Virus record (IMG/VR): IMGVR_UViG_3300020172_001601
Span: 248,001-312,000 of that record
DNA length: 64,000 nucleotides
Reading direction: 5' to 3' (one strand)
A model generated the notes under the pieces. That model worked only from the letters and a program-made list of their open reading frames with translations. It was not told where the DNA came from and searched no databases. Position numbers and translations under genes: made by a program. This document shows, piece by piece, positions 17,309 through 36,506 of this stretch (the stretch's first letter is position 1; each line of letters opens with the position of its first letter).

Positions 17309-17535
17309 GTTGCATAACGGGTACAAATGAGGTCAGGTCTATTGTACCCTAGCGGGCTGTTCGTATTTTCGGGTTTGGTTGGAGTCAGCGATGGTCACAT
17401 GCTCATATTGTGGTGGCAAAGGATATGACGTAAAGGACGTGCCGGGGACGAGCAAGCAGTGTCCTGTTTGCAAGGGTTCGGGAGAAGTGAAGCGTTAGGT
17501 CTGGTGTACCCTGGGAGTTGTCGGAAGAAATCGAC

Positions 17536-17565
17536 TTGAACCAAACATGGGTTTGGCTCTCTAGG
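17536..17565 (+). promoter_or_regulatory. Second motif class TTGAACC-N14-CTCTCTNGG (also at 19917, 20581, 24581)
   Basis: Four copies with an identical 14-nt spacing and unrelated spacer sequences. Confidence 0.75.
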
Positions 17566-17583
17566 TGTTTCAGGAGACAATAA

Positions 17584-18681
17584 GTGCTGCAACAAAACCA
17601 ACGCATCTTCTTCGGCCCGAAAGACCCTTGGGGTCATACGGAGCCGAGTGAGGAGCAACGTCGGGAAGCTGTATCCCGGACGAATGTGGCTTCGCCGTTC
17701 GCCAAGTTCATTGGGAACGACAAGGCTATTCGTAAATTGCAAACCGCTGCGTACAAGGCATTGGGTCAGTTCAACCATATGATGCGGGATTTGGCATTTG
17801 CCATTTTTGGCCCGTCATCGGCTGGGAAGACCACCATTGCCCGGTTGTATGCTGAGGTTGTGGAGCTTCCGTTTGTCGAGATCAGCCCGAAGGCGATCAA
17901 GACGGTGGACGATTTGTTCAAGGAAATCAGTCGGGTATTGGCCGAAGCTGGCCTGCCGCTGGTGGAAGTGATTCGTCGTGGTCATTACGTTCTGCCTCCT
18001 GTGGTCATCCTGATTGACGAAGTTCATGCTTTGTCGGATGGGGTTGTGCAGGGGTTGCTGAAGGCAACGGAATACAATGACGCAATGATGGCTACGGAAT
18101 CGGGCAAGACGGTGAACACCCACAATGTAACGTGGATGATTGCCACGACCGATGAAGGGAAGCTATTTGATGCTTTCCGTACTCGGTTCAGCCCGGTGAA
18201 CCTGAAGTATTTGGGCAAGGCCGATGTTGCCAAGATCGTTAAGCTGGCGAACCCAGATTTGAGCGATGATGTGTGCAGCATGGTTGCCCATTACAACAGC
18301 CGTATTCCTCGCAAGGCATTGGAATTCGCCCGGTATATGCGCCTGGTGAAAGATATGTCAGGCGGGACGTGGGAAGAGGTTGCCCGGCAGGTGGCCGAGG
18401 ATGAAGAGATTGACGAGCATGGGATGCACGCCGTCCATCTGAAGATTCTTCGGGCATTGGGTCAGGGGCCGATTGCCCGGAACCGTATTGCATTGGTGGC
18501 TGGGCGTAAGGATGAAGAGGTTGAGAAGTTCATCCTGCCTTGGTTGTTGACTGAGACTGACGATCAGGCCGCTTTGGTGACTGTATCCAGCAAGGGCTAT
18601 ACAATTACTGAGGCTGGGCTTGCTGAGTTGGAACGGCGGGCGATCAACCACAAGGGCGAGAAGGCTCTTGTGGCGGCTTAG
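17584..18681 (+). CDS. ruvB: RuvB-like AAA+ ATPase (Holliday junction branch migration)
   Basis: FIGN, GPSSAGKTT, IDEVH, ATT..G.L...RTRF, PRKA sensor, C-terminal wHTH with GP...E....PWL...KG..IT; order matches RuvB. Confidence 0.85.
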   Translation: MLQQNQRIFFGPKDPWGHTEPSEEQRREAVSRTNVASPFAKFIGNDKAIRKLQTAAYKALGQFNHMMRDLAFAIFGPSSAGKTTIARLYAEVVELPFVEISPKAIKTVDDLFKEISRVLAEAGLPLVEVIRRGHYVLPPVVILIDEVHALSDGVVQGLLKATEYNDAMMATESGKTVNTHNVTWMIATTDEGKLFDAFRTRFSPVNLKYLGKADVAKIVKLANPDLSDDVCSMVAHYNSRIPRKALEFARYMRLVKDMSGGTWEEVARQVAEDEEIDEHGMHAVHLKILRALGQGPIARNRIALVAGRKDEEVEKFILPWLLTETDDQAALVTVSSKGYTITEAGLAELERRAINHKGEKALVAA

Positions 18682-18799
18682 GAAAATATCAACACGCTGC
18701 ATATTGGGCGGTAGTACCTGGGGGACCAGCGAATCATCGGTGTCGAGGCCGACGTGTTGACTTTAGGTCTAGTGTACCCTGGCTGTCGGAGGAACAACA

Positions 18800-19270
18800 A
18801 TGAATACCAGAGTTGAAAAGCTGACGGCCAAGGTTGCTGCGGTGAATCGGGCCAACGAGTATGCGGCACGGTTATATGCTGCACTCGTCGAGAAGTTTGC
18901 CCCATTGGTTGGGCAGAAGATTCTCAAGGTAGATGGCACGCTGCTCGCCAAGTATGAGGGGCTGGTGCCGGTGCTGCCTTGTTCGCCCGATCTGCACGTT
19001 TACCGGCATTCGTCCGACTATTCGTTGGCGTGGACTGTGAAGACCTGCGAGTTCATGCCGCCGCATAGCTGCATGTACCATGAGGTTACGGTTTATGTCG
19101 GCGATCTTCGGGGTGCGACCTTGGAGAAGATGACTGTCCATCCGTTCACGGGTCGCACGGATTATTCTGTGGAAGAGATCACGGCGAAGCGGTTGTCGTA
19201 TGAGTCGGCGAAGCGGGTGGCCGATGAGCTTCGGGGCGAATTGTATCCTTTTGGGGAGGACGACCGATGA
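18800..19270 (+). CDS. Hypothetical cassette protein
   Basis: Motif, then GGAGG RBS. Confidence 0.8.
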   Translation: MNTRVEKLTAKVAAVNRANEYAARLYAALVEKFAPLVGQKILKVDGTLLAKYEGLVPVLPCSPDLHVYRHSSDYSLAWTVKTCEFMPPHSCMYHEVTVYVGDLRGATLEKMTVHPFTGRTDYSVEEITAKRLSYESAKRVADELRGELYPFGEDDR

Positions 19271-19410
19271 AGCGGATCAAGAAGACATATAAGACGCTCA
19301 AGCAGGCCGAGCGTTATCAGAACCGATTGTACAACAAATACAACTCGGTTCAGTTGGTTTCGTTTCCTCGATTCAGTGAGGACGGCGAGTACGTTTGGGA
19401 AGTGGCTTAG
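19267..19410 (+). CDS. Small hypothetical protein (47 aa)
   Basis: GGAGG RBS, ATGA overlap, stop is the motif TAG. Confidence 0.65.
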   Translation: MKRIKKTYKTLKQAERYQNRLYNKYNSVQLVSFPRFSEDGEYVWEVA

Positions 19411-19461
19411 GTCCAGTGTACCCTAGTGGGTGTTCGATTCAAAATCACACAGGAGAGTTCG

Positions 19462-19914
19462 ATGCCTTATGTTCCGAAGCACTTGGAGTTCTTGTCTCAT
19501 TCTGGAACTGCGGACGGCTGGCCCGCTGGGATAACTGAGGTTGGCAAGGAGTTTGCCACCAAGCGGGTTGCTGCTGGCTTGGAGAAGTATGGCCAGTTGA
19601 CGCTGGACACGGCGAAGGGTTGCATTTTCGATCATTACATTGACCGGGAGCCGGTGCCGGAAGAGTTGAAGGGTGTGACGTGGGATTGGTTGTATGGTGT
19701 GACGCATCGGGCGTTGCTGGCGGCATCAGCGCAGCAGGTGTGGGTGGCCGAGAAGTCTTACGTCAAGAAAAAGAAGACGAAGAAGGAATGGCATCCGGTG
19801 GCGGTGAGTCGTGCCGACGTTGAGGCACTGGAGACGGCGGGGACGGTGACGTTGGGTGTGACGGGTGAGCGGGTTCGGGCTTTGGCTGGTGTTCTTGGTC
19901 AACTGGTCAAATAG
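19462..19914 (+). CDS. Hypothetical cassette protein
   Basis: AGGAG RBS. Confidence 0.75.
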   Translation: MPYVPKHLEFLSHSGTADGWPAGITEVGKEFATKRVAAGLEKYGQLTLDTAKGCIFDHYIDREPVPEELKGVTWDWLYGVTHRALLAASAQQVWVAEKSYVKKKKTKKEWHPVAVSRADVEALETAGTVTLGVTGERVRALAGVLGQLVK

Positions 19915-20176
19915 CGTTGAACCAAACAACCTCTCAACTCTCTTGGGTATTGTAAGGGGTTGAGAGTTTACTTCGGATCGGTCAAACAGGGCGGGTGATC
20001 TTCGGACTGCCGCCGAGTTTTGTGAACGAGTAAAACATGCACTGGCCGTAGTTCGTGCGGGAGTGAGTCCCGCTTGGGTCACAGGACCGACCCTAGCAAG
20101 TGGTCCCTGCCAGTAGAACGCCGAACCGGGCAACAACCCATGCAATACACTTCTGGATTTTTTCTCTTCTTTTGTT

Positions 20177-20221
20177 GAAACGTCCGGGAGGCCCAGCACG
20201 TCTGCCTCCCGGACGTTTTTG
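20177..20221 (+). terminator. Intrinsic terminator
   Basis: aaacgtccgggaggc...gcctcccggacgtttt. Confidence 0.85.
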
Positions 20222-20300
20222 TTTGCTCACCAAGGGTACAAATGGGCTGAGGTCTATTGTACCCTAGTCGGCGTCAACGCAACTTTTCAAAGGGAATGAA

Positions 20301-20534
20301 ATGATTCGAGAAGCAAAGTGTATTGGTGTTGAGGGTGACGAAGACGGCGAGTTCAGTGATCTGGTCGGTACTTCGGGCAAGCTGCGGCTTGACGACAAGA
20401 GTACGGACAGTGCCGTGAACTGGTTCAATGGTGGTGGATCGGTCAACTTCACTCGTCGCCGGGTGGCTGAGAAGGATGGCGTGGTGAAGGTATTCACGAA
20501 GTTGGGGAACGTCTTCAAGTTCAGATTGGTTTAG
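20301..20534 (+). CDS. Hypothetical cassette protein
   Basis: Stop is the motif TAG. Confidence 0.7.
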   Translation: MIREAKCIGVEGDEDGEFSDLVGTSGKLRLDDKSTDSAVNWFNGGGSVNFTRRRVAEKDGVVKVFTKLGNVFKFRLV

Positions 20535-20634
20535 GTCCAGTGTACCCTAGCTGGTGTCGGAAAGAAAAAAAGAGATCGCCTTGAACCAAGTGTTTGGTTG
20601 GCTCTCTCGGATAGAACACACAGGAGACTTTACG

Positions 20635-22218
20635 ATGGCTGCGTTTTTGATGATTCAGAACCCCGGTGTTGCTCCCGAAGAGGCTTTCACTCTGTTGGGT
20701 GCTTCAACCAAGCGGGACAGTGAAAACGGTGCGACGATTGGTAAGTTCGGTACGGGGAACAAGCACGGTGTTGCGGTTCTGCTTCGCAACCAGTTGAGTC
20801 CTGTGGTGTTTGCGGGGAATTTGAAGCTGGAGTTCGGGACTCGCCAACAGCCGGTGAATGACGGGATCAAGAATACCGTCTTCAACCGTGTTGTGGTGAA
20901 GTTTGGCGGCAAGGACCGGGCGGGTGTATCACGTTCGGCGACGGAAGACCTTGGCTTCGTTCTGGAGCATGGGTCGGCAGACTGGCTGTCCGTGGATTTG
21001 GCCCTTCGTGAGTTCGTGTCCAACTCTTTGGACCGAGCTATTGAGGAAGGGGAAGTTCAGTTCGTCCATCAGTACATCACGTCCCGGTCCTTGGAGTTTC
21101 AGCAGGCTGCTGCCATCAAGGGATCGTATGAGAATCGGGAGATTGCCGATGCTCTGGCGATCTATCGCAAGACTTCGACGGACTACAAGAACGTCGTGGT
21201 TGAAGTGGTGAATGATGGTCAGGTTCGGGCGAAGGCGGGGCATACTCGCATCTTCATCCCGTTGACTGTGGAAGTGCTGGCCTTCTTCAATGATTTGGGC
21301 AAGTGGTTCCTGCACTTCAGCGAGCCGGAACTGTTGAACAAGACGATTCTGCCGAAGTCGAATCGTAACCTTGGGGATCGTCGGTCGGCTGTGATATATC
21401 GTCGTGGTGTTCGTGTTCGGGAATTCGAGTCATCGGATACGCCGAGCCTGTACGACTACAACTTGGAGAATCTGAAGCTGGACGAATCCCGTCGTGTGGA
21501 CGATTGGTATGTCCAGTATGAAGCGGCGGCGGCTTTTGCTGCTGCTGACGTGGAAACGGTGTCCCGGTTGTGGCAGTCGTTCCTTGACGGTCAGAAGTAT
21601 TGGGAGCATAGCTTCCAGTCCTATGGGCTGGAGACTGGCATCCACAAGGAAGAACAGAAGGCAGTATGGACGAAGGCATTCGAGAGCGTGGCTGGTGAGA
21701 ACGCTGTCGTCTCAACTGAGGAAGGCGGGCAGCAGGCTGCTCGTAAGGGCTTCAAGGTTGTGACTGCACCGCAGGCGTTTGTGCAAGCTGCCGAGAAGCA
21801 TGGGGTTCGCACTCCTGCCAAGGTGTTGTCTGAGGACGAACGGGCTGGCCGGACGATCTTCGATGCAACGCCGGATGCCGAGGCTGCTGTCGAGTTTGCA
21901 TGGTATTTGGTCAACAAGTACGGGGTCACGAATGGCAAGAACAAGCCGGTTGTGAAGACGTTCCGAAAGATCATGGATGCCGGGTCGCAGACGTTGGGGT
22001 TCTACAAGGATGGCGTGGTGTACATCAACCAAGACATTGCAGCGAGTGGTTCGCTGTCTCTTGGGTGGCATTCACTGACTCAGCAATTGCTGGTGACGGC
22101 AATTGAGGAAGTGGCACACCATGTCACGGGAGCTACGGACAACAGCCGGGACTTCCAAGACTTCCTGTTGAATCTGGTGGTCTACATGGCGAAGGAACTG
22201 TCAGGTGTGACGTTCTAA
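20635..22218 (+). CDS. GHKL (HATPase-like) ATPase with C-terminal zincin-like segment
   Basis: GASTK...IGKFGTG and ALREFVSNSLD; C-terminal EEVAHH; AGGAG RBS before ATG 20635. Confidence 0.75.
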   Translation: MAAFLMIQNPGVAPEEAFTLLGASTKRDSENGATIGKFGTGNKHGVAVLLRNQLSPVVFAGNLKLEFGTRQQPVNDGIKNTVFNRVVVKFGGKDRAGVSRSATEDLGFVLEHGSADWLSVDLALREFVSNSLDRAIEEGEVQFVHQYITSRSLEFQQAAAIKGSYENREIADALAIYRKTSTDYKNVVVEVVNDGQVRAKAGHTRIFIPLTVEVLAFFNDLGKWFLHFSEPELLNKTILPKSNRNLGDRRSAVIYRRGVRVREFESSDTPSLYDYNLENLKLDESRRVDDWYVQYEAAAAFAAADVETVSRLWQSFLDGQKYWEHSFQSYGLETGIHKEEQKAVWTKAFESVAGENAVVSTEEGGQQAARKGFKVVTAPQAFVQAAEKHGVRTPAKVLSEDERAGRTIFDATPDAEAAVEFAWYLVNKYGVTNGKNKPVVKTFRKIMDAGSQTLGFYKDGVVYINQDIAASGSLSLGWHSLTQQLLVTAIEEVAHHVTGATDNSRDFQDFLLNLVVYMAKELSGVTF

Positions 22219-22319
22219 CATCAATTGAGCCTGTGTGTGACGGACGGGGGACTGCCAACCCCGTCCGTTTTTTTGTTTATTGCGGTAGGTCTATTGTACC
22301 CTGGGTGGTGGAGGGACAA

Positions 22320-22577
22320 ATGAGAAAACGAATCGTGTTGAATGGTCGGAACGAATACGATGGAAGTCCATCGCATTACTGTTTTGATTTCGATGTCAAG
22401 TTCAATCGGCATGGCAACATTGAAGTGATTGTTGACAAAACGTCATCTTCGTTTGTTTCCTTTTTCCGTGCTGGCAAGTACGTCTTCACTCGGTCGGGCT
22501 TTTGCATTTCGCATCCTGCATCGGAGCGATATCGCTATCACAAGGTCAATGCCGAACTGGTTGAGAGTCACACATAG
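22320..22577 (+). CDS. Hypothetical cassette protein
   Basis: GGAGG RBS; stop is the motif TAG. Confidence 0.7.
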   Translation: MRKRIVLNGRNEYDGSPSHYCFDFDVKFNRHGNIEVIVDKTSSSFVSFFRAGKYVFTRSGFCISHPASERYRYHKVNAELVESHT

Positions 22578-22608
22578 GTACAGTGTACCCTAGTGGGTGG
22601 AGGATAAC

Positions 22609-22812
22609 ATGAAATATGAAAAGTGGATAAGAGATCATCTTTGTGATGTTCATTTTCAGAGCAATGGTTCTACGGGTGGTTGGACTGTTAAGACTTGGGT
22701 TGGCTTTGTGAATGGCTTTATTACAACGGAACATTTTGGTTCTTTGCCGCCTGTGATGGACGAAGTGGTTGAATCTATTCTTAGGAAGGTTGGAAGCAAT
22801 GACGAACGATGA
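22609..22812 (+). CDS. Hypothetical cassette protein
   Basis: GGAGG RBS. Confidence 0.65.
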   Translation: MKYEKWIRDHLCDVHFQSNGSTGGWTVKTWVGFVNGFITTEHFGSLPPVMDEVVESILRKVGSNDER

Positions 22813-23020
22813 ATTTGAAGAGTTGCAGTCTGAAGCTGGCGACTTGGAAGGTCAGTTGGACGAAGCGAAGGATCACTTGAGTAGTGTCACGAGTTGCGAA
22901 ACGCAATCGGACTTCAAGGCGAACCTTACTGAGCTACGGCAAACTCTGACTGTGCTATTGGCTGAAACCACTGATTTGTGGCAGCGTGCTGGTGGTCGTC
23001 CTGTTCGGAAAGCCAAATAG
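22799..23020 (+). CDS. Small coiled-coil protein
   Basis: Stop is the motif TAG. Confidence 0.65.
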   Translation: MTNDEFEELQSEAGDLEGQLDEAKDHLSSVTSCETQSDFKANLTELRQTLTVLLAETTDLWQRAGGRPVRKAK

Positions 23021-23044
23021 GTCCAGTGTACCCTAGAGGGCATC

Positions 23045-23374
23045 ATGCAAAAAACAATTGAAGGACTACAAGCGAAGCTGGACGAGCAGAAGCAACTGCT
23101 TCGCACCCTTGCGATGTGGGGCAAGGTTCAAGAGCAGGGCATCAATCCTGACGATGTTAAGTCGTTCGGGTTTGATCCTGCCTTGATGACTGCCCAAGAA
23201 CGCAACGAGGCACGCCGGGCGAATCGGTTGAACTACACAACCAACAATCCCTATGGCTGGCCGATCAGTCGGAATGAGGAAGGGCAGGCCAGGATTATTG
23301 GACTGAAGCACAACTTCGTCCGGTTGCACTCTGGCGAAAAGGTGAAGTTATCCCCAATGGTGGATCGGCCTTAG
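23045..23374 (+). CDS. Hypothetical cassette protein (near-leaderless)
   Basis: ATG 3 nt after predicted +1; stop is the motif TAG. Confidence 0.75.
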   Translation: MQKTIEGLQAKLDEQKQLLRTLAMWGKVQEQGINPDDVKSFGFDPALMTAQERNEARRANRLNYTTNNPYGWPISRNEEGQARIIGLKHNFVRLHSGEKVKLSPMVDRP

Positions 23375-23425
23375 CTCCAGTGTACCCTAGTGGGTGTTAC
23401 TTCAACAATTCACGGAGACTATGCG

Positions 23426-29690: not shown

Positions 29691-30401
29691 ATGAAAGAAC
29701 TCGAAGCTGCGTTGAACGAAGAGTTGGCGAAGGTGCTGGGTGCAAAGCACAACTGGATGGGCGTGATTGCCGGGGTTGCCGGTCGCCGAGCCAGTGAGTT
29801 TGCCCGGACGAAGAACGGTTTGCTGGAAGACGTTGTGACCGACGTGACTGGCGACATCATTCTTCAGGCGAAGGAAGGCAAGCTGGCGGGTGCGGTGATT
29901 CGTGCCAAGGAAGCATCCCATACGGATGAAGAACTGGTGGAGAACTTACGGCACGTCGTCATGAAGGCGGCGTTCTACCGGGTGAGTGATGCCATGAAGT
30001 GGCGCTATCGCAGCGGCACTCAGTTCAGCCAGATCAGTGCTGAGAATGACTTCTCCGAGACTGTGGAAGCTCGCCCGGAAACCGAAACCGACTTGACCTA
30101 TTACACGGACCTGTTGGTGAATGAGTTGGAAGTGATGGCGACTGCTGCCGACTGGAAGCACAATCGCACCGGGAACCCCAGCTATCCGAAGCAGGCGAAG
30201 CGGTTACGGAAGTCCAAGGAAATGGTGCCGGATCGGGTCGAGGGGATGGCGTTGAAGGATTTGATGGAGAAGTACAGCGTCGGCAGCAAGGGCGGGATGC
30301 AACAGCATCTTGACGACATTGGGCAGGCACTTGCCCGTGTTGCCGGTCGGCTGGGTGATCCTACCTTGGTTCGAGGGACCAAGGGGATCGAGGTTGCTTA
30401 G
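29691..30401 (+). CDS. Divergent ECF-type sigma factor-like protein
   Basis: Region-2-like EDVVTDV...LRHVVMKAAFYRVSDAMKWRYR; region-4-like EGMALKDLMEKYSVGSKGGMQQHL; 236 aa. Confidence 0.5.
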   Translation: MKELEAALNEELAKVLGAKHNWMGVIAGVAGRRASEFARTKNGLLEDVVTDVTGDIILQAKEGKLAGAVIRAKEASHTDEELVENLRHVVMKAAFYRVSDAMKWRYRSGTQFSQISAENDFSETVEARPETETDLTYYTDLLVNELEVMATAADWKHNRTGNPSYPKQAKRLRKSKEMVPDRVEGMALKDLMEKYSVGSKGGMQQHLDDIGQALARVAGRLGDPTLVRGTKGIEVA

Positions 30402-30455
30402 GTCCAGTGTACCCTAGTGGGTGTAACAACCCACTAGACTTTGCGAGGGAATCAA

Positions 30456-30740
30456 ATGCCAAAAGGTCAATTGCCAAAAGATCAAATTGTATATCAGGTC
30501 GTCACTAAAGGTGGCGGCGTTGATGGTCGGGACCATACTGACAAGGGCGGCAACATCAAGTTCGCATCCTTTGATCGTGCCGAAGCTGAGAAGCAAGTCA
30601 CGGCATGGGATGACCTGAAGTTGGTTGCCATGAGTGGCAAAGAATTGCTGGCCCTTAAAAAGAAGGTCTTGGCAAAGTTGGACGGTGTTGAAAAGCTGGT
30701 GCTTGAGTTGCCCGCAACGGTGCGGACGAACAATTGGTAG
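30456..30740 (+). CDS. Hypothetical cassette protein
   Basis: Stop is the motif TAG. Confidence 0.7.
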   Translation: MPKGQLPKDQIVYQVVTKGGGVDGRDHTDKGGNIKFASFDRAEAEKQVTAWDDLKLVAMSGKELLALKKKVLAKLDGVEKLVLELPATVRTNNW

Positions 30741-30796
30741 GTCCAGTGTACCCTAGTGGGTGTAACAGCCCACTGGACTTTGCGAGGAAGTGAACC

Positions 30797-31123
30797 ATGC
30801 GATTGAGATATGACTATTCAACAAAGATGTGCCGTGACCGATTCGCAAGGATCGAGAAACTCGGCAAGATCAAGTTGGTGCGGGGCTATCGCTACTTTGG
30901 CCGGTACAACACGAGCCATGAAGCGGTGCTAGTTGTCGGAGAGAACGGCACTGCACGCTTCGGCGGGTTGTTGTGGGGTTATGGTGGCGAAGGTCCACGG
31001 GGATTGCAGGAACTATTGTTGAAGCTGAATGTGCCAGCGGCACAAGCTGAAGCGATTGCTTTCTCAACACCCCGGAAGGATGAGATCGGCGAAGACTGGC
31101 GGCTGGTGCTGCCGGTCAACTAG
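30797..31123 (+). CDS. Hypothetical protein (WGYGGEGP motif)
   Basis: GAGG RBS; stop is the motif TAG. Confidence 0.75.
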   Translation: MRLRYDYSTKMCRDRFARIEKLGKIKLVRGYRYFGRYNTSHEAVLVVGENGTARFGGLLWGYGGEGPRGLQELLLKLNVPAAQAEAIAFSTPRKDEIGEDWRLVLPVN

Positions 31124-31185
31124 GTCCAGTGTACCCTAGTGGGTGTGCTGGTGAGTGTTTCAAAACCCTGTTTCGGAGAGATCGA

Positions 31186-31452
31186 ATGAGCAAGTCAAGT
31201 GCAGTTGTGGTTGTTGGTCGTGGCCGTCCTGAGCAGTACAGCGCCGGATTCATCCGTGCCTTCAAGGTGATCGTGCGGAAGCACGGTTTGCTGGCGGGTC
31301 GGGAGTTCATCAACGCCAACGGCGTGACGGTCGGCGGGAAGCATCGGGACGTGAGCATCAGCTTGCCGACCCTGAGCAAGTACGTCAAACGTGATGAAGT
31401 CGGTGGCAAGGCCGTGCCTCTCTTCCGTGGTCGTCCTACGAAGGCAGCGTAA
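31186..31452 (+). CDS. Small basic protein with two GRP motifs (possible DNA binding)
   Basis: GGAG RBS; RGRP twice. Confidence 0.65.
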   Translation: MSKSSAVVVVGRGRPEQYSAGFIRAFKVIVRKHGLLAGREFINANGVTVGGKHRDVSISLPTLSKYVKRDEVGGKAVPLFRGRPTKAA

Positions 31453-31607
31453 CCTTCGGGTATGCGGGGCAGGGAATGGTCCCTGCCCTATAGGGTGCTT
31501 GGCCTAGCCGAGCAATAGCAATACCCAAATGAGAATCACTGGGCGGCGTTTAGGTCTAATGTACCCTAGAGGGTGTTGAACACAACATCCTTGAATGCGA
31601 GGAAATC

Positions 31608-32432
31608 ATGAGTGGATTTGCAGTCGGAACGTATGTTGGCCCGGCTGGTGTTCGTCGGCTGTCTTATGAGGACGGGCTGGCGAAGCTGAAGGGAAAAGAC
31701 CAGAAGAAGTTGGAAAACAACACCTATCTGGTGAAGGTGGATGACAAGACGCTGGGCGTGAAACTTCACAATACCATCGTCGTCTACATCTTCAAGAGCG
31801 GGGTGTACCAACTGGACACGGGCGGTTGGCGTACCGTGACCTCAAAGGACCGCATCAACCGATATGGTCCAGCGACGGTGCATCAGAAGAACAACATTTG
31901 GTACATCGGTGACGGCATCTATGAGGATGGCGTCCGGGTCAATGCTGAAGGCAAGGTGTTGACGCCGCAACGTGGGGTCAAGGTGGTCGAAGCGAAGAAA
32001 CGCAAGCTGGACCGCATGGTGTTGAAATACATCAAGGGGTTCGGGGAGCATGTGATTCGCAACGGGTTGCAAGTGGATAAAGCTGACAAGCCCACCGAGC
32101 AATCGCCGTGGAAGGTCGTGGAGTTAGTTGAAGGCCCCAAGCCTATTGCTCCGGGGCCGGGAGACTGTTGGGCGTGTTACTTCGGTATCACGTCAGACGA
32201 TCCCCTGAAAGAGCCACTAGGGGTCGAGCATCTGCTTGAGCATATGCTCGAAGCATACTTCGTCCCCAGCTTACTCTGGAAGGCGATTGTGGCGAATGGG
32301 TATCAAAACCCCGGCTTCATCTGGCATAGCATTGCCAGCGATGCCCGGCGTGGCGAAAGCCGGTTCCTAAGTCGTGTCCTGACTGCCTACTTCCGAAAGC
32401 GGAAACCGGCACTGTTGGACTTGATGGAATAA
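31608..32432 (+). CDS. Conserved phage hypothetical protein (LDTGGW.TVT.K.RIN family)
   Basis: Recognisable N-terminal domain; GAGG RBS. Confidence 0.75.
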   Translation: MSGFAVGTYVGPAGVRRLSYEDGLAKLKGKDQKKLENNTYLVKVDDKTLGVKLHNTIVVYIFKSGVYQLDTGGWRTVTSKDRINRYGPATVHQKNNIWYIGDGIYEDGVRVNAEGKVLTPQRGVKVVEAKKRKLDRMVLKYIKGFGEHVIRNGLQVDKADKPTEQSPWKVVELVEGPKPIAPGPGDCWACYFGITSDDPLKEPLGVEHLLEHMLEAYFVPSLLWKAIVANGYQNPGFIWHSIASDARRGESRFLSRVLTAYFRKRKPALLDLME

Positions 32433-32506
32433 AAAACAGGAACCCGCCATGAACTGAATCATGTGCGGGTTCTCTTGATTTACAACTTGTGAAAGGCTGG
32501 TGGACA

Positions 32507-32806
32507 ATGAACGCTGTTGGATTGAAGAACTTTACTGAACAGGTGATAAACTCGCCTGAACCCGTGCTGGTTGACTTCTGGGCAAGTTACTGCGCTCCAT
32601 GCCGGGCGTTAAAGCCGATCCTGAATGAAGTGTCAGCGACGGGGGCCAAGGTTGTGACGGTGGACATAACCGAGGAACCTGAACTGACTGCCCACTACGG
32701 CATCACTGCAATTCCTACGTTGGTCGTCTTCAAGGGCGGGCAACCGGGCCAGCGGGTTGTCGGGGTGAAGAAGAAGGACGAACTTCTGCAACTCATCAGT
32801 GCCTAA
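32507..32806 (+). CDS. trxA: Thioredoxin
   Basis: VLVDFWASYCAPC; YGITAIPTLVVFKGG. Confidence 0.9.
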   Translation: MNAVGLKNFTEQVINSPEPVLVDFWASYCAPCRALKPILNEVSATGAKVVTVDITEEPELTAHYGITAIPTLVVFKGGQPGQRVVGVKKKDELLQLISA

Positions 32807-32888
32807 ACCGTGTGCCGCCTTCGGGCGGCAACACCTTGCGAAGTCTAGTGTACCCTACGGGGTGTTCCAAGAAAGAAGAGGAGCTACT

Positions 32889-33494
32889 GTGAATGAGCTT
32901 GCGATTGCACGCCCCGGAAGTCTTGATCCCCGAACCCGTGTTCGTCACGGCAGAGAACGTGAACGGCAGATCGCCGTTGCGTTGAAGGATCAAGTGGGCC
33001 TCCCCATTACTGATGCCACTGAGTTCGAGGACAAAGAACGCAAGGTTGACCGATGGATCGCCTATCCTTCGGGCCGAGTTGCCCTTCAGATCAAATACCG
33101 AGAAGTCGGGGAAGACCTTCTGTTCGAGGTCTACGACAAGTTCTTCGGTTGGGATGATCCGAAGAACAAGCTGGGCCGGGATATGTTCGGCGATGCCAAG
33201 GAGTACGCCGTGCTGCTGGCTGACCGTCATACCGTCGTGATGGTTCCGACACAGCTTGCCAAGGATACCGTCGCCAAGATGACGGAGAAGGCACGCAAAG
33301 AAGGTTTCACGCATGGAGCGGTGAGTTCAACTCTCCGCTACTATGTTCACGGCCTGAAGCTGGAATTGAAGGTCCAGCGTGATCCCGGCGACGGACGCCA
33401 GAAGATGGTGGCATACATCCCCGCCAGCTACTTCGTGGCCGAGGCTCAAGCCAAGGTTTACCAAGTGGCACTGCCGAAGAAGTGGCAATCGTAG
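32889..33494 (+). CDS. Putative PD-(D/E)XK nuclease-like protein
   Basis: D..RKVD...ALQIKYR pattern; GAGGAG RBS; stop is the motif TAG. Confidence 0.45.
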   Translation: MNELAIARPGSLDPRTRVRHGRERERQIAVALKDQVGLPITDATEFEDKERKVDRWIAYPSGRVALQIKYREVGEDLLFEVYDKFFGWDDPKNKLGRDMFGDAKEYAVLLADRHTVVMVPTQLAKDTVAKMTEKARKEGFTHGAVSSTLRYYVHGLKLELKVQRDPGDGRQKMVAYIPASYFVAEAQAKVYQVALPKKWQS

Positions 33495-33550
33495 CTCCAG
33501 TGTACCCTATGGGGTGTGAAGACAATATTGCACCCCATAGGGAGATGATG

Positions 33551-33772
33551 ATGAGCATTGAACGACAACTTGTGAAGGGAGTAACGACGACTGATGTTGC
33601 CGAAGTCGTCAAGGTCAATGAGTGCATTCGCTACATTGAATCTTGCGGCTGGTTGTTGAAGCAACGTGCCAGGGGCTATTACTACTTTCGCAACGAAAAC
33701 GCCAATGAAGGTCAGCGAGACATGACTTTTTCCTTGGCAGAACTTCGGGAGGCATACCACAATGGATGGTAA
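33551..33772 (+). CDS. Hypothetical cassette protein
   Basis: GGAG RBS. Confidence 0.65.
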   Translation: MSIERQLVKGVTTTDVAEVVKVNECIRYIESCGWLLKQRARGYYYFRNENANEGQRDMTFSLAELREAYHNGW

Positions 33773-33966
33773 AGTCAAAATAAGTCACAACTATTGGTGG
33801 GAAAACGCAGTGTATTACAGGCGTTCCATCTGCGGCGGCAATATTCAGGTCTGGAACGGTCGAATATGGACTGATGCTGCCGAGTCCTGACTTATACTGA
33901 CTATTGCATACCCTTCTCCATAGGGAGTATGGGGAAGAAAGTCAGGTCTATTGTACCCTAGCCGGT

Positions 33967-34268
33967 GTAATCGCAAATTACAACACCCAGCACGGGTGGA
34001 ACGCCGAGAGCCACAGGAGTAAGCACAGAAAGCATCCTCGCTGCGAAAACAATCGAGGATCGACCCGGAATAAGCCGGTCAGACAGAGTGTGAAGGCAAG
34101 AGGGTAAGCCCCTCCCACAATATATCACTCTGAATCAGTGTGGCCACACTGAGTCTGATCGAACGAAGAAGGGCAGTGCCGAAACGACTGGACGGGCGAA
34201 AGTCAGTCACTTGCTGTTGCACAGTGCATCGAAGACCGAAGGGGACGCCCTTCGGTTTTTCTTTTTTC
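33967..34268 (+). ncRNA. Candidate structured ncRNA (~300 nt)
   Basis: Lies between the motif and a terminator; no convincing ORF; at least 6 hairpins. Confidence 0.55.
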
Positions 34269-34325
34269 ATTTTGTTTAGGTCTATTGTACCCTAGCTGGC
34301 ACAACCCCTAACGAAAGGCAATGCG

Positions 34326-34514
34326 ATGAACGAACAAGAATGGCTGGAAGCATTCAATGCCGAGTTCCTGCGTAAAACCGGCATCACATGGGCAGACGGT
34401 GGGCTGGAAGATCAGGACGCCATCAATCGCTACTTCCCGGAAGACGTGAAAGACGCTGTTCTCCAGCACATGGAGAAATACGACTTGGACGACGTGACCC
34501 AACTGTGGGCATAG
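34326..34514 (+). CDS. Small acidic protein
   Basis: Stop is the motif TAG. Confidence 0.7.
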   Translation: MNEQEWLEAFNAEFLRKTGITWADGGLEDQDAINRYFPEDVKDAVLQHMEKYDLDDVTQLWA

Positions 34515-34535
34515 GTCCAGTGTACCCTATTGGGT

Positions 34536-34651
34536 GTAATCGACCCGGCAACGCCCGAAAGATTCTAGGCAAGTACGGCGTAACCGTGACATTCCGATCA
34601 TCCTGTTCACCGGCCTGCGGGTCAAAGGGGATAGAGAGTCGGGTCGATTAC
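34536..34651 (+). ncRNA. Candidate structured sRNA/leader
   Basis: GTAATCGACCCGGC at predicted +1 pairs with GTCGGGTCGATTAC; T-run follows. Confidence 0.55.
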
Positions 34652-34678
34652 ATTCTTTTTCTTTTAGGAGAACCTGCG

Positions 34679-34843
34679 GTGAAGAAAAAATACCTTATTG
34701 CTCTGCCTTCTTTCCCTAATTCCAAGGGATTCAATCATCGAACCATTCTTGTCAGTGCAACCGACAAGAACGATGCCGTTAGCCTTGCCCGGCATTTGCG
34801 TCCGGGTGAAAACATTGGCGACATCAAGGAAGTGAACTACTAG
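34679..34843 (+). CDS. Small hypothetical protein
   Basis: AGGAG RBS; stop is the motif TAG. Confidence 0.6.
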   Translation: MKKKYLIALPSFPNSKGFNHRTILVSATDKNDAVSLARHLRPGENIGDIKEVNY

Positions 34844-34899
34844 GTCCAGTGTACCCTAGTGGGTGTAACGATCACTCAACCCCTGCGAAAGAAACGACA

Positions 34900-35331
34900 A
34901 TGGACAACCTCACGAAACTTGCGATTTCCAAGGCTCTGGAAAAGGACACGAAGAACTTCAAGGCCACGCCGGGAGTTCACGACATCGACACCACGATCAC
35001 CCTGCGAGTCAAAGGCACGGTGAAGAAGGGTGCGGATTCGGATTACACGCCGACCGTGGACATTCCGCTCCTGCCGACCTTGGCACTCGTCATGGAGAAG
35101 GCTGGCTTCATGCGGGAACGGGCAAAGGAATTGCTGATCGAAGCAATGACGGAAGCCCTCGAACTCAGCACCAAGGGCGAAGAGTTCGTTGCCGACCGTG
35201 TGAAGAACATCGACGAAGCGATGGCGCACGTCCGGGAAGTCACCGGGGCCTTGCCGAAGAAGACCAAGAGCGGGGCAACGAACGTCACCGTGACGGTCGA
35301 AGAAGTCGCTCCGGTCGAAGTCGGTGCCTAA
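34900..35331 (+). CDS. Hypothetical cassette protein
   Basis: Followed by a terminator at 35340-35375. Confidence 0.75.
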   Translation: MDNLTKLAISKALEKDTKNFKATPGVHDIDTTITLRVKGTVKKGADSDYTPTVDIPLLPTLALVMEKAGFMRERAKELLIEAMTEALELSTKGEEFVADRVKNIDEAMAHVREVTGALPKKTKSGATNVTVTVEEVAPVEVGA

Positions 35332-35437
35332 CACTGACCGCACGGCAACACTGACAATGTTGCCGTGCTTTTTGTTGGTCGTTGTTAGGTCTAGTGTACC
35401 CTATTGGGTGTAACGAACCCCAACCTGCGAGAATAAA

Positions 35438-35770
35438 ATGAAAACTGCGACCATCCCGCAACGCAATCAACGCCTGTACAAGTGCTGGAACGGCGAACTG
35501 GAAACAGTGCTGTTCCGTGAGCAATCAATCTCCGAAGGGGCGTTTGCCGAAACGTGGCTAGTGTTCGACCCGAAGGACAGCCGCCGCATTCGTTGCAGCA
35601 TTGGCAGCTACTTCACCACGCCTTACTTGGCATGGAAGGCCGAACTCAAGAGCTACCAAGACGGCCTGAAGGCCCAACGGGTGGCACTGAAGAAGGCACG
35701 GGAAGAGATCGTCACCACGAAGGCCACCATTGCCCGGCTCAAGGACATGGTTGCCCGCTCAAGCACATAA
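35438..35770 (+). CDS. Hypothetical protein with C-terminal coiled coil
   Basis: Follows motif and leader. Confidence 0.7.
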   Translation: MKTATIPQRNQRLYKCWNGELETVLFREQSISEGAFAETWLVFDPKDSRRIRCSIGSYFTTPYLAWKAELKSYQDGLKAQRVALKKAREEIVTTKATIARLKDMVARSST

Positions 35771-35780
35771 GGAAAGAACA

Positions 35781-36014
35781 ATGGCACGGCCTCAAGCATA
35801 CGACCCGCAAGAGGGTTACAAGTATCAAATCCTGACCCGCAATCCAGCGTATGGCAGAGCATGGGAGCATTGCGACTATGCGAAGGACAAGGACGAGAAA
35901 AACCACTTGATCGGCGAATATCGCTTGGCCTATGGTGCCGGGTGGGAATTCAAGGTCATCACGTTGCCCGTCAAGTATTGGCCGAAGAGGTCCAGTGTAC
36001 CCTTGATGGTGTAA
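35781..36014 (+). CDS. Hypothetical protein reading through the motif (RSSVP)
   Basis: AAGGA RBS. Confidence 0.65.
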   Translation: MARPQAYDPQEGYKYQILTRNPAYGRAWEHCDYAKDKDEKNHLIGEYRLAYGAGWEFKVITLPVKYWPKRSSVPLMV

Positions 36015-36038
36015 CCAACACCCTGCGAGGACAAGACA

Positions 36039-36269
36039 ATGATTAGCCGTGTGCAAGTATTTGAAACCAAGGGCAAGCAGTTCCCGACCTTGAAGAAGGC
36101 AATTGACTTCCGGGAGGGGCTGATTGAAGAGTTCATTCGGAAGCTGCCAGGGTTCGATCAAATGCGACACAAGGACCGCATTGCCTTCATTCAATCCATC
36201 ATCGACAACCGTGAGGTTCTGGTGGACTTGTTTGACTACAACGAAATTCTGGACGAAGACGAAGAATAA
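36039..36269 (+). CDS. Hypothetical cassette protein
   Basis: GAGG RBS. Confidence 0.7.
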   Translation: MISRVQVFETKGKQFPTLKKAIDFREGLIEEFIRKLPGFDQMRHKDRIAFIQSIIDNREVLVDLFDYNEILDEDEE

Positions 36270-36506
36270 AGAGGATCATTCAGGTCTGTGAGCAGCGGGG
36301 TAACTGGCAGGGAGGCATCCTGTCAGCCTGAATCGAGCGATGGTAAGGGCCAGCGAGGGGGCTGGACATTCGACTGTATTAGGTTCCAGCCCTGATGCGA
36401 CCGAATGCCCCTCGCTGGCACCTGCCTGCATTCAAACCAAGGGTACAAATGACCTTACGTCTATTGTACCCTAGTGGGTGTAACAAACAACAAGAAAAGG
36501 AACACA

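What the first reader, a model, noticed from the sequence alone, without database searches (positions are those of the whole stretch)
17319..36471. Three motif copies are full 12-7-12 inverted sites resembling tyrosine-recombinase targets
Seen: GGGTACAAATGA-ggtcagg-TCTATTGTACCC (17319), GGGTACAAATGG-gctgagg-TCTATTGTACCC (20234) and GGGTACAAATGA-ccttacg-TCTATTGTACCC (36441) have identical geometry. A tighter palindrome, CACTAGGGTAC-gtccagt-GTACCCTAGTG, is at ~43715. All other copies have only the right arm plus the spacer end TAGG. Established: tyrosine recombinase sites have 11-13 bp arms around a 6-8 bp spacer, and R64 shufflon sfx sites conserve only the spacer and one arm. Inference: either full and half recombination sites, or overlapping divergent promoters giving antisense RNA. 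No recombinase is visible in this window.
Basis: partly seen in the sequence, partly recalled or inferred. Interest (0 to 1): 0.8.

Follow-up and report, generated by a model that had tools for sequence, protein, structure and literature searches.

The report
Huge-phage promoter-like repeats bounding gene cassettes
The three inverted sites are real, but they are a few head-to-head pairs within an array of 61 same-strand copies of a 26-base promoter-like signal that precedes nearly every small gene in a 28-kb block of a huge freshwater phage and marks where related phages have gained, lost or swapped those genes.

Summary
The three 12-7-12 sites exist exactly as described (17319, 20234, 36441), and so does the palindrome at 43714-43742. 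They are a small subset of something larger. There are 61 co-oriented copies of TAGGTC[C/T]A[G/T]TGTACCCTAGnGGGTGT between 17224 and 45021, plus 2 reversed copies at the right end.

Each copy sits about 40 nt upstream of a start codon. Class B (..CCAGT..) carries the stop codon of the upstream gene. Class A (..CTATT..) follows a strong intrinsic terminator.

The window comes from a phage genome of at least 390 kb. In close relatives, 30 of 42 breakpoints of structural differences fall on a motif copy, giving whole-cassette indels and replacements by unrelated DNA. Crossover points vary and junction motifs are chimeric.

Across the clade the core TGTACCCTA is kept, while the upstream bases change in all copies of a lineage together. 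One lineage also has an ECF-sigma-like bipartite promoter motif in the same positions.

Best reading: these are phage-specific promoters that double as homology "linkers" for modular gene shuffling, functionally like the PeSLs of T4-type phages. The inverted sites are back-to-back motif pairs. I found no evidence for a tyrosine recombinase. Promoter activity is inferred, not shown, because no RNA data were available.

The parts
17224..45021 (+). Array of 61 co-oriented copies of the 26-nt motif TAGGTC[C/T]A[G/T]TGTACCCTAGnGGGTGT, about one per gene or unit. Motif starts: 17224, 17334, 17496, 18764, 19408, 20249, 20532, 22286, 22575, 23018, 23372, 24253, 25304, 25922, 26470, 27074, 27507, 28119, 28363, 29163, 29636, 30399, 30738, 31121, 31551, 32840, 33492, 33943, 34277, 34512, 34841, 35386, 35987, 36456, 36666, 36923, 37411, 37734, 38091, 38587, 38870, 39155, 39449, 39708, 39857, 40261, 40560, 40865, 41306, 41594, 42010, 42380, 42709, 43101, 43451, 43722, 44023, 44554, 44792, 44978, 44996.
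   Evidence: PWM scan; alignment and information content; 13 copies share an identical 26-mer. The start codon lies mostly 36-43 nt after GTACCC. The proteins are not paralogous.
17319..17349 (.). Full inverted site 1: a partial reversed motif copy (GGGTACAAATGA), 7 nt, then the class A core; it follows the terminator at 17272-17304 plus T-run.
   Evidence: hairpin -12.4 kcal/mol. A similar site is kept in L114 and L119.
20234..20264 (.). Full inverted site 2; it follows the terminator at 20198-20216 and precedes gene 20301-20534.
   Evidence: Kept in L114, L119 and L121 and, with the same 19-nt distance between GGGTAC and GTACCC, in L128. Absent in L127.
36441..36471 (.). Full inverted site 3. 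In relatives L002, L112 and L113 it is a perfect 16-5-16 palindrome made of two complete class A motifs.
   Evidence: L002 hairpin -26 kcal/mol, z -7.6.
43714..43742 (.). Tighter palindrome CACTAGGGTAC-gtccagt-GTACCCTAGTG, built on the downstream half of a class B copy. L002 has two copies of it.
   Evidence: -20.7 kcal/mol, z -5.0.
45063..45150 (-). Two reversed class A-like copies (starting at 45150 and 45088 on the minus strand). They converge on the last + copies across a TGCATAG x3 repeat and an AT-rich stretch, and form the right boundary of the array.
   Evidence: The arrangement is kept in L002.
28073..28144 (+). Example of the class A composite: an intrinsic terminator (stem 28073-28101 plus T-run) followed 18 nt later by the motif. 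The same layout has stems at 17272-17304, 20198-20216, 22240-22268, 34231-34260, 35340-35368, 39409-39429, 41265-41290, 42667-42691, 43405-43433 and 44507-44537.
   Evidence: Terminator scans; inverted repeat I8; sequence.
27074..27130 (+). Example of class B. The TAG at 27074-27076 is the stop of gene 26522-27076; then come the motif, a 5'UTR with a GGAG Shine-Dalgarno sequence, and the ATG at 27128.
   Evidence: In 27 of 34 class B copies the embedded TAG ends an ORF of at least 40 codons.
30409..30747 (+). Motif-to-motif cassette present here but absent from all relatives sampled. Other whole-cassette differences: 33953-34286, 38597-38879, 40271-40569. Replaced by unrelated DNA in relatives: 36480-37407, 41325-41593, 44577-45000, 22614-23044.
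   Evidence: X4 contigs.
33943..34268 (+). Self-contained unit of class A motif, about 300 nt without an ORF, then an intrinsic terminator: a candidate small RNA gene driven by the motif.
   Evidence: z -3.0; 98.8% identical in L002; absent in L110, L113 and L123.

Best explanation
The motif is the promoter, with the first transcribed bases, of a phage-specific transcription system in the variable small-gene block, probably early genes, of a huge phage of at least 390 kb.

A contiguous recognition sequence of about 19 bp (TAGGTCnAnTGTACCCTA) is followed by a less conserved 2-4 bp stretch and a G-rich start region (GGGTGT). A 5'UTR of about 25-35 nt with a Shine-Dalgarno sequence then leads to the start codon.

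Two classes exist. Class A (CTATT) restarts transcription directly after intrinsic terminators and also drives ORF-less units. Class B (CCAGT) sits between genes of an operon, so tightly packed that its first three bases, TAG, are the upstream gene's stop codon.

Because the same 20-45 bp is repeated before every gene, the copies also act as portable homology. Recombination between copies, within a genome or between co-infecting relatives, deletes, inserts or replaces whole promoter-gene cassettes without breaking genes.

The three 12-7-12 sites are places where a second, mostly degenerate, copy lies head to head with a class A copy. They are divergent motif pairs or hairpins, not dedicated recombinase targets.

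Shown here: the array, its placement, the terminator coupling, the breakpoints at motifs and the clade-wide co-variation. Inferred: promoter activity, the identity of the polymerase or sigma factor, and a homology-driven mechanism.
For: 1. Placement.
- 61 copies, all on the coding strand and none inside an ORF beyond its stop codon. The distance to the start codon peaks at 36-43 nt.
- Copies also precede ORF-less units that end in terminators and tRNA-like sequence. The signal therefore acts before translation.

2. Terminator coupling.
- At least 10 of 13 class A copies lie 26-43 nt after a strong hairpin plus T-run. A unit that starts right after a terminator needs a promoter there.

3. No competing promoters.
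- Sigma-70-type promoter matches in the block are not above shuffles: 9 against 11.0 expected, and 4 against 6.2 expected. None coincide with the motif.

4. Shape of conservation.
- A contiguous high-information block, then a low-information position, then a G-rich stretch.
- Between orthologous copies the core diverges 2.1% against 4.0% for the coding flank, p = 0.006.

5. Clade-wide behaviour.
- Homologues of the neighbouring 527-aa protein lie on contigs of 0.2-0.67 Mb, and synteny is kept.
- The core TGTACCCTA is kept. The upstream bases change in all copies of a lineage together: TAGGTC, TAGTGT or AAGTAA. This is as expected for a sequence read by a co-evolving protein.
- The A/B distinction is kept in L127 and L128.
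- In L129 the same intergenic positions, including those before both anchor genes, carry a bipartite GAAC-N17-GTCT motif. It has a compensatory stem-loop in its spacer and is an ECF-sigma-like promoter in form.

6. Cassette exchange.
- 21 structural differences separate the window from its relatives. Of the 42 breakpoints, 30 fall within -16..+45 of a motif, against about 5.7 expected. In 12 events both ends are on motifs.
- Deletion junctions are chimeric motifs, and the crossover position varies.
- The cassette proteins are unrelated to each other.

7. Published analogue.
- PeSLs show the same logic in T4-type phages (PMC2839356, PMC4122927).
Against: - There is no transcript evidence. No RNA run was listed as holding the sequence, so no 5' ends are known.
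- No RNA polymerase or sigma gene was found in the 64-kb window or the loci examined, and the rest of the genome was not read.
- A promoter before every gene inside an operon is unusual. Class B could instead act on RNA.
- A subset of 5'UTRs pairs with the CTAGnGGGTG part of the motif, with compensatory changes (30409, 33502 and 38597). That implies this part is transcribed in at least some RNAs, for example read-through transcripts.
- Breakpoints at motifs could partly reflect selection for intact units rather than a recombination preference.
Confidence: 0.6

Rival explanations
1. The motif copies are targets of a site-specific recombinase, of the tyrosine-recombinase, shufflon or integron-attC type. 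The recombinase would be encoded elsewhere in the genome. The three full sites would be complete sites and the others half sites, and cassettes would be excised and integrated enzymatically.
For: - The 12-7-12 geometry is real, and there is a perfect palindrome in L002.
- Cassette indels and replacements are bounded by motifs.
- The ORF stop codon lies inside the repeat, as in many integron cassettes (established knowledge).
- Only 64 kb of at least 390 kb were examined for enzymes.
Against: - All array copies are direct and single-armed.
- The full sites are not preferred breakpoints.
- Crossover points vary from the core to the 3' edge, with only 2-3 nt of microhomology in one case.
- The left arm is absent in L127 at the orthologous site.
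- There is no attC-like long imperfect palindrome at ordinary copies.
- No integrase Pfam hit appears in the window or in three relatives' loci.
- The fixed spacing to start codons and the terminator coupling are not explained by this reading.
Confidence: 0.07
2. Class B, and perhaps the shared core, acts at the RNA level. Possible roles are a processing or cleavage site, a 5' stabilising hairpin, or a termination-reinitiation signal that couples the upstream stop codon to the next gene. On this reading only class A would be a true promoter.
For: - The embedded TAG is the stop codon in 27 of 34 class B copies.
- Stops occur in all three frames within the motif.
- A small ACCC-UAGU-GGGU hairpin with G-U pairs forms on the + strand only.
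- Some 5'UTRs pair with the motif's 3' part with compensatory changes.
- The class A/B difference (TATT against CAGT) could switch a -10-like element on or off.
Against: - The 5' half is invariant, while 3'-half changes are not compensated. Predicted structures are heterogeneous.
- The upstream TAGGTC part is equally conserved in class A, where nothing upstream is transcribed past the terminator.
- Lineage-wide replacement of the upstream bases, and substitution by an ECF-like bipartite DNA motif in L129, point to DNA recognition.
Confidence: 0.17
3. The motif is a binding site for some other DNA-binding protein, such as a repressor or operator, a nucleoid or partition protein, or a primase or replication signal. 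The palindromic sites would be the dimer-binding versions.
For: - High sequence conservation, with a palindromic sub-core (GTAC, CTAG).
- The three or four palindromic versions.
- GGTC/GTGTC in the upstream part resemble T7-type primase recognition sequences (own knowledge, weak).
Against: - Strict co-orientation with genes, a fixed distance to start codons and coupling to terminators are promoter properties.
- An operator would still need a promoter next to it, and none is detectable.
Confidence: 0.06
4. This concerns the three full sites only. They are functionless or weakly functional by-products, such as decayed head-to-head duplications of the motif or extra hairpins that reinforce the upstream terminator, rather than working divergent promoters.
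For: - The left arms score under 12 bits with the motif PWM.
- They lack the lineage-specific TAGGTC at two of the three sites and lack the GGGTGT start region.
- No leftward ORF or better-folding leftward RNA exists.
- The left arm is missing in L127.
- As RNA or DNA they form hairpins of -12 to -26 kcal/mol right after terminators.
Against: - They are kept at all three places in close relatives.
- At one place they are kept in L128, at 76% protein identity, with identical spacing.
- The L002 copy is a perfect full motif.
Confidence: 0.4

Closest known systems
PeSLs (promoter-early stem-loops) of T4-type phages (Arbiol et al. 2010, PMC2839356; Comeau et al. 2014, PMC4122927)
   Same: - Repeated regulatory cassettes sit immediately upstream of ORFans in hyperplastic regions.
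- The element starts at the stop codon of the upstream gene and ends at the Shine-Dalgarno sequence and start codon of the next.
- It has a composite terminator/promoter character.
- Indels and replacements between close relatives are bounded by the repeats.
- The proposed mechanism is recombination between the repeats.
   Different: - The sequence is not a sigma-70 consensus but a contiguous, phage-lineage-specific recognition block of about 19 bp.
- It is much denser and more uniform: 61 copies in 28 kb, 13 of them identical 26-mers.
- It has two positional classes.
- The terminator is a separate upstream hairpin, present only at class A.
- It is found in uncultivated huge phages (0.3-0.67 Mb), not T4-like myoviruses.
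- Mini-circles and promoter activity are untested here.
Promoters of phage-encoded RNA polymerases (T7, T3 and SP6 type, about -17 to +6)
   Same: - A contiguous conserved block of about 20 bp, then a short less conserved stretch, then a G-rich start.
- Many near-identical copies per genome.
- Related phages differ at a few upstream positions in all copies together.
- Hairpin plus U-run terminators.
   Different: - There is no sequence similarity beyond general shape.
- No single-subunit polymerase gene has been identified.
- The copy number per kb is far higher.
- The transcription start is not mapped.
R64 shufflon sfx sites with the Rci recombinase, and tyrosine-recombinase core sites in general
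   Same: Short repeats in which one arm and the spacer end are conserved; three copies have 12-7-12 inverted geometry.
   Different: - Shufflon repeats are inverted and give inversions, whereas these are direct repeats and give deletions and replacements.
- No recombinase was found.
- Crossover points are variable.
Integron gene-cassette arrays (attC sites)
   Same: A unidirectional array of unrelated small ORFs separated by a repeated element that overlaps the ORF end, with cassette-wise gain and loss.
   Different: - There is no attC-type 57-141-nt imperfect palindrome.
- No intI, attI or Pc was seen.
- Each cassette carries its own leader and Shine-Dalgarno sequence at a fixed distance from the repeat.
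- The repeat is conserved as sequence rather than as structure.
ECF-sigma-dependent promoters (-35 GAAC, about 16-17 nt, -10 CGT/GTC; own knowledge)
   Same: The second motif of relative L129 (TTTCCGAACC-N15-GGTCTTCC) has this bipartite form and occupies the same intergenic positions.
   Different: The window's own motif has no conserved element 17 nt upstream. Only AGGTC resembles the -10-like part.

Membership tests
Tyrosine-recombinase core site or R64-type shufflon | Inverted 11-13 bp arms around a 6-8 bp spacer | tested here: met
   Three sites 12-7-12 with 10 of 12 arm positions matching; one palindrome 11-7-11. The other 57 copies have one arm only.
Tyrosine-recombinase core site or R64-type shufflon | Repeats in inverted orientation flanking invertible segments (shufflon) | tested here: not met
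   61 of 63 copies are direct repeats on the + strand. Differences from relatives are deletions, insertions and replacements, and no inversion was seen.
Tyrosine-recombinase core site or R64-type shufflon | A cognate recombinase gene (R-H-R-H-Y) | tested here: inconclusive
   None was found in the 64-kb window or in three 21-kb loci of relatives. About 85% of the at least 390-kb genome was not examined.
Tyrosine-recombinase core site or R64-type shufflon | Crossover at a fixed position in the spacer | tested here: not met
   Junctions map to anywhere in the identical core in two deletions. In others they map to the 3' edge (GGGCATG|TGTAAC) or to +9..+20 after GTACCC.
Integron cassette array | attC: a 57-141-nt imperfect palindrome with R''/L''-L'/R' boxes (RYYYAAC...GTTRRRY) at each cassette end | tested here: not met
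   Ordinary copies show only a 4-7-bp hairpin. GTGTAAC matches RYYYAAC at 6 of 7 positions, but no partnered GTTRRRY follows before the next start codon (read from the sequences).
Integron cassette array | intI integrase with attI and Pc next to the array | tested here: not met
   The flanks at 15.8-17.2 kb and 45.2-47.3 kb hold ORFs without an integrase domain.
PeSL-type mobile regulatory cassette (a functional class, not a homologous family) | Repeated intergenic motif upstream of ORFans in a variable region, spanning the upstream stop codon to the downstream Shine-Dalgarno sequence and start codon | tested here: met
PeSL-type mobile regulatory cassette (a functional class, not a homologous family) | Indel and replacement breakpoints between close relatives lie at the motif | tested here: met
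   30 of 42 breakpoints, against about 5.7 expected; chimeric junction motifs.
PeSL-type mobile regulatory cassette (a functional class, not a homologous family) | Sigma-70 consensus -35/-10 promoter | tested here: not met
   No sigma-70-type match coincides with the motif, and counts are not above shuffles.
PeSL-type mobile regulatory cassette (a functional class, not a homologous family) | Stem-loop terminator or attenuator as part of the element | tested here: inconclusive
   Present as a separate hairpin plus T-run before class A copies and absent at class B. L129's second motif has a stem-loop between its two boxes.
PeSL-type mobile regulatory cassette (a functional class, not a homologous family) | Excised mini-circles; promoter activity in a reporter assay | not testable with these tools
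   Only assembled contigs were available, and they break at the repeats.
Phage-polymerase (T7-type) promoter | Contiguous conserved block of about 20 bp with a lineage-specific specificity region | tested here: met
Phage-polymerase (T7-type) promoter | Cognate phage RNA polymerase gene; mapped +1 | not tested
   The genome outside the window was not read. The giant ORF of more than 3105 aa beside the window has no detectable polymerase similarity. No RNA data were available.

The most novel reading that the evidence does not exclude
The repeats are the recombination sites of a dedicated, phage-borne cassette-capture system, an 'integron of huge phages'. One short element would serve at once as promoter, upstream stop codon and target of a yet unseen recombinase encoded elsewhere in the genome of at least 390 kb. 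The palindromic full sites would be its complete substrates.
Probability: 0.07. Interest if true: 0.85.

Novelty: new variant of a known kind. Interest (0 to 1): 0.58.

Why it matters
Huge phages (0.3-0.7 Mb) are known almost only from metagenomes, and nothing is known about how they are transcribed.

- **A candidate promoter consensus.** This array gives a concrete consensus for a whole clade: the core TGTACCCTA with lineage-specific upstream bases, plus an ECF-like class in one lineage. It can be tested in vitro. It can be used to predict transcription units and temporal classes, and to search for the cognate polymerase or sigma factor.
- **How the small-gene block turns over.** Promoter-gene cassettes are swapped at the repeated promoter. 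This extends the PeSL principle from T4-type phages to an unrelated and far larger group, with a much more regular architecture.
- **Practical annotation use.** The motif delimits genes and small-RNA units precisely in genomes where most ORFs have no homologues.

Tried and rejected
- **tRNA and RNA family searches.** ARAGORN and Rfam (gathering and E-value modes) found no tRNA or known RNA family in the block, only terminator-like hits.
- **Known phage similarity.** Megablast of 20 kb against GenBank phages gave no match.
- **RNA evidence.** No RNA run was listed as holding the sequence. The single read-laying run on four DNA runs gave contigs that end at the repeats. The listed 'joints' with sides under 30 nt are therefore repeat artefacts, not recombination products. 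Only the cassette presence or absence in X4 was used.
- **Chance hits.** Single 19-mer hits in L005 and L115 are chance matches in unrelated AT-rich contigs. The 14-mer class A scan was mostly chance hits.
- **Conserved RNA structure.** A conserved RNA structure for the motif plus 5'UTR was rejected, because the predicted folds are heterogeneous and changes are uncompensated.
- **Leftward RNA at 36441.** A leftward non-coding RNA left of site 36441 was not supported. The + strand folds with z -3.3 and the minus strand with z -1.5.
- **Stop-codon read-through.** Read-through or recoding of the embedded TAG was rejected. The distance from the TAG to the next start codon is not in a constant frame.
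- **Cassette duplication.** Paralogy of the cassettes was rejected. Only one protein pair is related.
- **Giant neighbouring ORF.** It was tested as a possible virion polymerase against Pfam, PDB sequences and PHROGs, with nothing significant.
- **Literature.** A string search for the motif found nothing relevant.

Full report
**Observation**

The three sites GGGTACAAATGR-N7-TCTATTGTACCC are at 17319, 20234 and 36441, with none expected by chance. The tighter palindrome is at 43714-43742.

Searching for the core GTACCC and then scanning with a position weight matrix gives 61 + strand copies of a 26-nt motif, TAGGTC[C/T]A[G/T]TGTACCCTAGnGGGTGT, between 17224 and 45021. There are two minus-strand copies at the right edge (45150, 45088) and nothing elsewhere in the 64 kb. 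Shuffles never reach 4 bits, while real copies score 17-46 bits, and 13 copies are identical 26-mers.

**What the window is**

- It is 100% identical to positions 248,001-312,000 of IMGVR_UViG_3300020172_001601 (340 kb). It also lies on an ENA contig of 390,142 bp.
- It encodes a tyrosyl-tRNA synthetase, a CCA-adding enzyme, an AAA ATPase and mostly ORFans.
- The nearest GenBank record is a 595-kb uncultured phage.
- It is therefore a huge phage from freshwater samples.

**Anatomy of the array**

The 28-kb block is one-directional and consists of small, mutually unrelated ORFs; only one paralogous pair exists. Almost every ORF is preceded by a motif copy. The start codon lies mostly 36-43 nt after GTACCC and is preceded by a GGAG or GCGAG Shine-Dalgarno sequence.

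There are two classes, plus 14 copies with other or intermediate forms such as CTAGT.

- **Class B** (..TCCAGTGTACCC.., 34 copies) lies between genes. In 27 of the 34 its first three bases, TAG, are the stop codon of an upstream ORF of at least 40 codons.
- **Class A** (..TCTATTGTACCC.., 13 copies) lies 26-43 nt after a strong hairpin plus T-run in at least 10 cases. It also precedes units without an ORF. One example is 33943-34268, which ends in its own terminator and folds with z -3.0.

Sigma-70-type promoter matches are not enriched in the block and do not coincide with the motif. Information content forms a contiguous block, highest at TGTACCCT. It is followed by a nearly free position and a moderately conserved GGGTGT.

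**Comparison with close relatives (about 90-95% identity)**

The relatives are L002 (the same contig as L109, L111 and L112), L110/L121, L113/L116/L122, L114, L117, L119, L120 and L123. They differ from the window by 21 structural events inside the block.

- Thirty of the 42 breakpoints fall within -16..+45 nt of a motif's GTACCC. About 13.5% of the sequence, or 5.7 breakpoints, would be expected there.
- In 12 events both ends are at motifs.
- These events are precise losses or gains of motif-to-motif cassettes: 30409-30747, 33953-34286, 38597-38879 and 40271-40569.
- They also include replacements by unrelated DNA. For example, three cassettes at 36480-37407 correspond to two different ones in L002, and the same holds for 41325-41593 and 44577-45000.
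- Contigs of a further run (X4) lack 36933-37420, 38597-38879 and 41316-41603.

At two clean deletions the single remaining motif is chimeric. It has the 5' variant of the left copy and the 3' variant of the right copy, so the crossover lay inside the shared core. In another deletion the junction is at the 3' edge, with 2-3 nt of microhomology. In the replacements, similarity ends at +9 to +20.

The position of exchange is thus not fixed. This argues for homology-driven exchange, or replication slippage, at the repeats rather than a site-specific cut.

**Comparison across the clade**

The 527-aa protein at 20635-22215 has more than 700 homologues, many of them on contigs of 0.2-0.67 Mb. The order AAA ATPase, small genes, 527-aa protein, long run of small genes is conserved. 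Each lineage has its own version of the motif around a constant core:

| Locus | Identity of the 527-aa protein | Motif | Copies |
|---|---|---|---|
| L127 | 87% | TAGTGT[C/A]A[G/T]TGTACCCTAG | about 25 in 15 kb |
| L128 | 76% | TAGTGT[C/A]ATTGTACCCTAG | 23 in 21 kb |
| L130 | 68% | cAAGTAATGTACCCTAATGGGTG | 35 in 21 kb |
| L129 | 61% | TTTTAGAGnTTTGTACCCTAC | 11 in 21 kb |
| LR756511 (L131) | 36% | AGCTGTAC only, + strand only | 14 in 41 kb |

- The change of the upstream bases in all copies of a lineage together is what one sees when a DNA signal co-evolves with the protein that reads it.
- The A/B split is kept in L127 and L128, with the A form after T-runs.
- In L130 an embedded TAA again serves as the upstream stop codon.
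- In L129, 15 intergenic positions carry a different motif, TGAAAGTTTCCGAACC-N15-GGTCTTCCTTGCGAG. These positions include those before both conserved anchor genes.
- The two boxes of that motif have the spacing of an ECF-sigma promoter (GAAC-N17-GTCT; the comparison is from my own knowledge). Its spacer forms a stem with compensatory changes. This is the 'stem-loop between -35 and -10' layout described for PeSLs.
- Between orthologous copies of the window and its close relatives, the core diverges 2.1% against 4.0% for the coding flank. Changes concentrate at the two class-defining positions and at the free positions after CCCTA.

**Interpretation**

The placement, the terminator coupling and the ORF-less units all indicate a transcription signal read as DNA. 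So do the absence of other promoters, the contiguous recognition block and its lineage-wide co-variation, and the substitution by a bipartite sigma-type motif in one lineage. The motif is most likely the promoter of a phage-specific polymerase or sigma factor.

Its repetition makes it a linker for modular exchange of promoter-gene cassettes. The closest described system is the PeSL of T4-type phages (PMC2839356, PMC4122927). The present element differs in four ways. It is not sigma-70-like, it is much more uniform and dense, it has two positional classes, and it belongs to uncultivated huge phages.

Promoter activity is inferred. No RNA run holding the sequence was listed. No polymerase, sigma factor or recombinase was seen in the parts of the genome read.

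**The three full sites**

Each is a class A copy with a second, reversed copy overlapping its upstream edge.

- In the window the reversed arm is degenerate. It scores under 12 bits, reads ATTTGTACCC instead of TATTGTACCC, and lacks the GGGTGT start region.
- In L002 the site equivalent to 36441 is a perfect 16-5-16 palindrome of two complete class A motifs.
- The pairs are kept in close relatives at all three places. At the place before the small gene upstream of the 527-aa protein, a pair is kept in L128 with identical spacing, but it is absent in L127.
- No leftward ORF follows them. The conserved non-coding 36272-36440 folds better on the + strand, z -3.3 against -1.5.
- As single strands they form hairpins of -12 to -26 kcal/mol directly behind terminators.
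- They are not preferred breakpoints.

They are therefore best described as head-to-head motif pairs. They may be weak divergent (antisense) promoters or terminator-reinforcing hairpins. They are not demonstrable recombinase targets.

**Rivals**

- A dedicated site-specific system (integron- or shufflon-like) is not excluded, because most of the genome was not read. However, several defining features were tested and not met: inverted orientation, a fixed crossover, attC structure and an adjacent integrase.
- An RNA-level role for class B (processing, stability or coupling to the embedded stop codon) remains possible. It is the main uncertainty.
- A few 5'UTRs pair with the 3' part of the motif with compensatory changes. 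That part is therefore transcribed at least in read-through RNAs.

**Verdict**

The recombinase reading is not supported, and the divergent-promoter reading is plausible for the three sites. The real feature is a clade-wide promoter-like repeat that structures and shuffles the small-gene block of huge phages. I classify it as a new variant of a known kind.

Noticed in passing
window 39492-39630 and 27340-27505: tRNA-like sequences, each preceded by a motif copy. The first has acceptor, D-arm and T-arm (GGTTCGATGCC) elements with an insertion of about 70 nt. The second has two T-arm-like GGTTCGA boxes. Neither ARAGORN nor Rfam calls them. In L110, 27336-27505 is replaced by a different 191-nt sequence.
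   Followed up: partly
window 19915-20224: Non-coding stretch of about 310 nt with UUCG-type loops that ends in a strong terminator; it folds with z -3.3. Positions 19915-20167 are an insertion specific to this phage, since relatives have 17 nt there, and it is not bounded by the motif. It is a candidate small RNA or a small mobile insert.
   Followed up: partly
window 33943-34268 and 36272-36440: ORF-less, well-conserved structured stretches. The first is a complete unit of class A motif, about 300 nt and a terminator (z -3.0), and is absent from three relatives. The second lies between gene 36039-36269 and site 36441 (+ strand z -3.3).
   Followed up: partly
window 45000-45150: The right end of the array has two overlapping + copies and TGCATAG repeated three times. 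These are followed by a hairpin and a 45-nt AT-rich stretch flanked by two reversed motif copies (33-nt direct repeat, 82% identical). The arrangement is conserved in L002. It could be a convergent terminator region, a small antisense RNA pair or an origin-like element.
   Followed up: partly
window 15706-17180: The left boundary region has other short repeats: AATGTGTGAAGG at 16633, 16802 and 16992 (with the core also at 15706), and TTGATTGCCTTTT three times at 17133-17175. These may be signals of a different regulatory class at the divergence point between the leftward genes and the array.
   Followed up: no
L124:3-9317 (-), starting about 414 nt beyond window position 64000: Giant ORF of more than 3105 aa next to the window, with no significant Pfam, PDB-sequence or PHROG match. 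Its size recalls injected or virion giant proteins, but there is no evidence for a polymerase domain.
   Followed up: partly
L129 (673-kb contig), e.g. 8361-8400, 12597-12640: A second intergenic motif, TGAAAGTTTCCGAACC-N15-GGTCTTCCTTGCGAG, occurs in 15 copies in 21 kb. It has an embedded stop codon, ECF-sigma-like box spacing and a spacer stem-loop that keeps pairing through compensatory changes (CCTCCG/CGGAGG, CCTTGC/GCAAGG, CCTCGC/GCGAGG).
   Followed up: partly
L131 = LR756511.1 47873-89222: The distant 595-kb relative has only a short + strand-specific repeat, (c)AGCTGTAC(a), 14 times in 41 kb around the homologue of the 527-aa protein. It may be the same signal in a more degenerate form.
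   Followed up: partly
window 4395-5138, 46618-47262, 52762-53241, 53241-54341, 57600-58202, 58298-59914: Auxiliary genes outside the array: a voltage-gated-type ion channel (Ion_trans), a C39 peptidase, a staphylococcal-type nuclease, tyrosyl-tRNA synthetase, a HAD domain of RNA-repair proteins and a CCA-adding enzyme.
   Followed up: no
runs X4-X13 ('organism A'): Small DNA runs of about 280 million letters under a single coded organism label hold about a third of the 31-mers of 36000-42000. Their contigs are 95-97% identical, with cassette differences. A relative may exist in a defined culture or enrichment, which could give access to a host.
   Followed up: no
L002 5890-5990 and 12930-13000 vs window 43690-43760: The palindromic class B site, together with about 45 nt of its upstream flank, occurs twice in the relative L002 but once in the window. 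A motif with adjacent sequence has therefore been copied to a second cassette boundary.
   Followed up: partly
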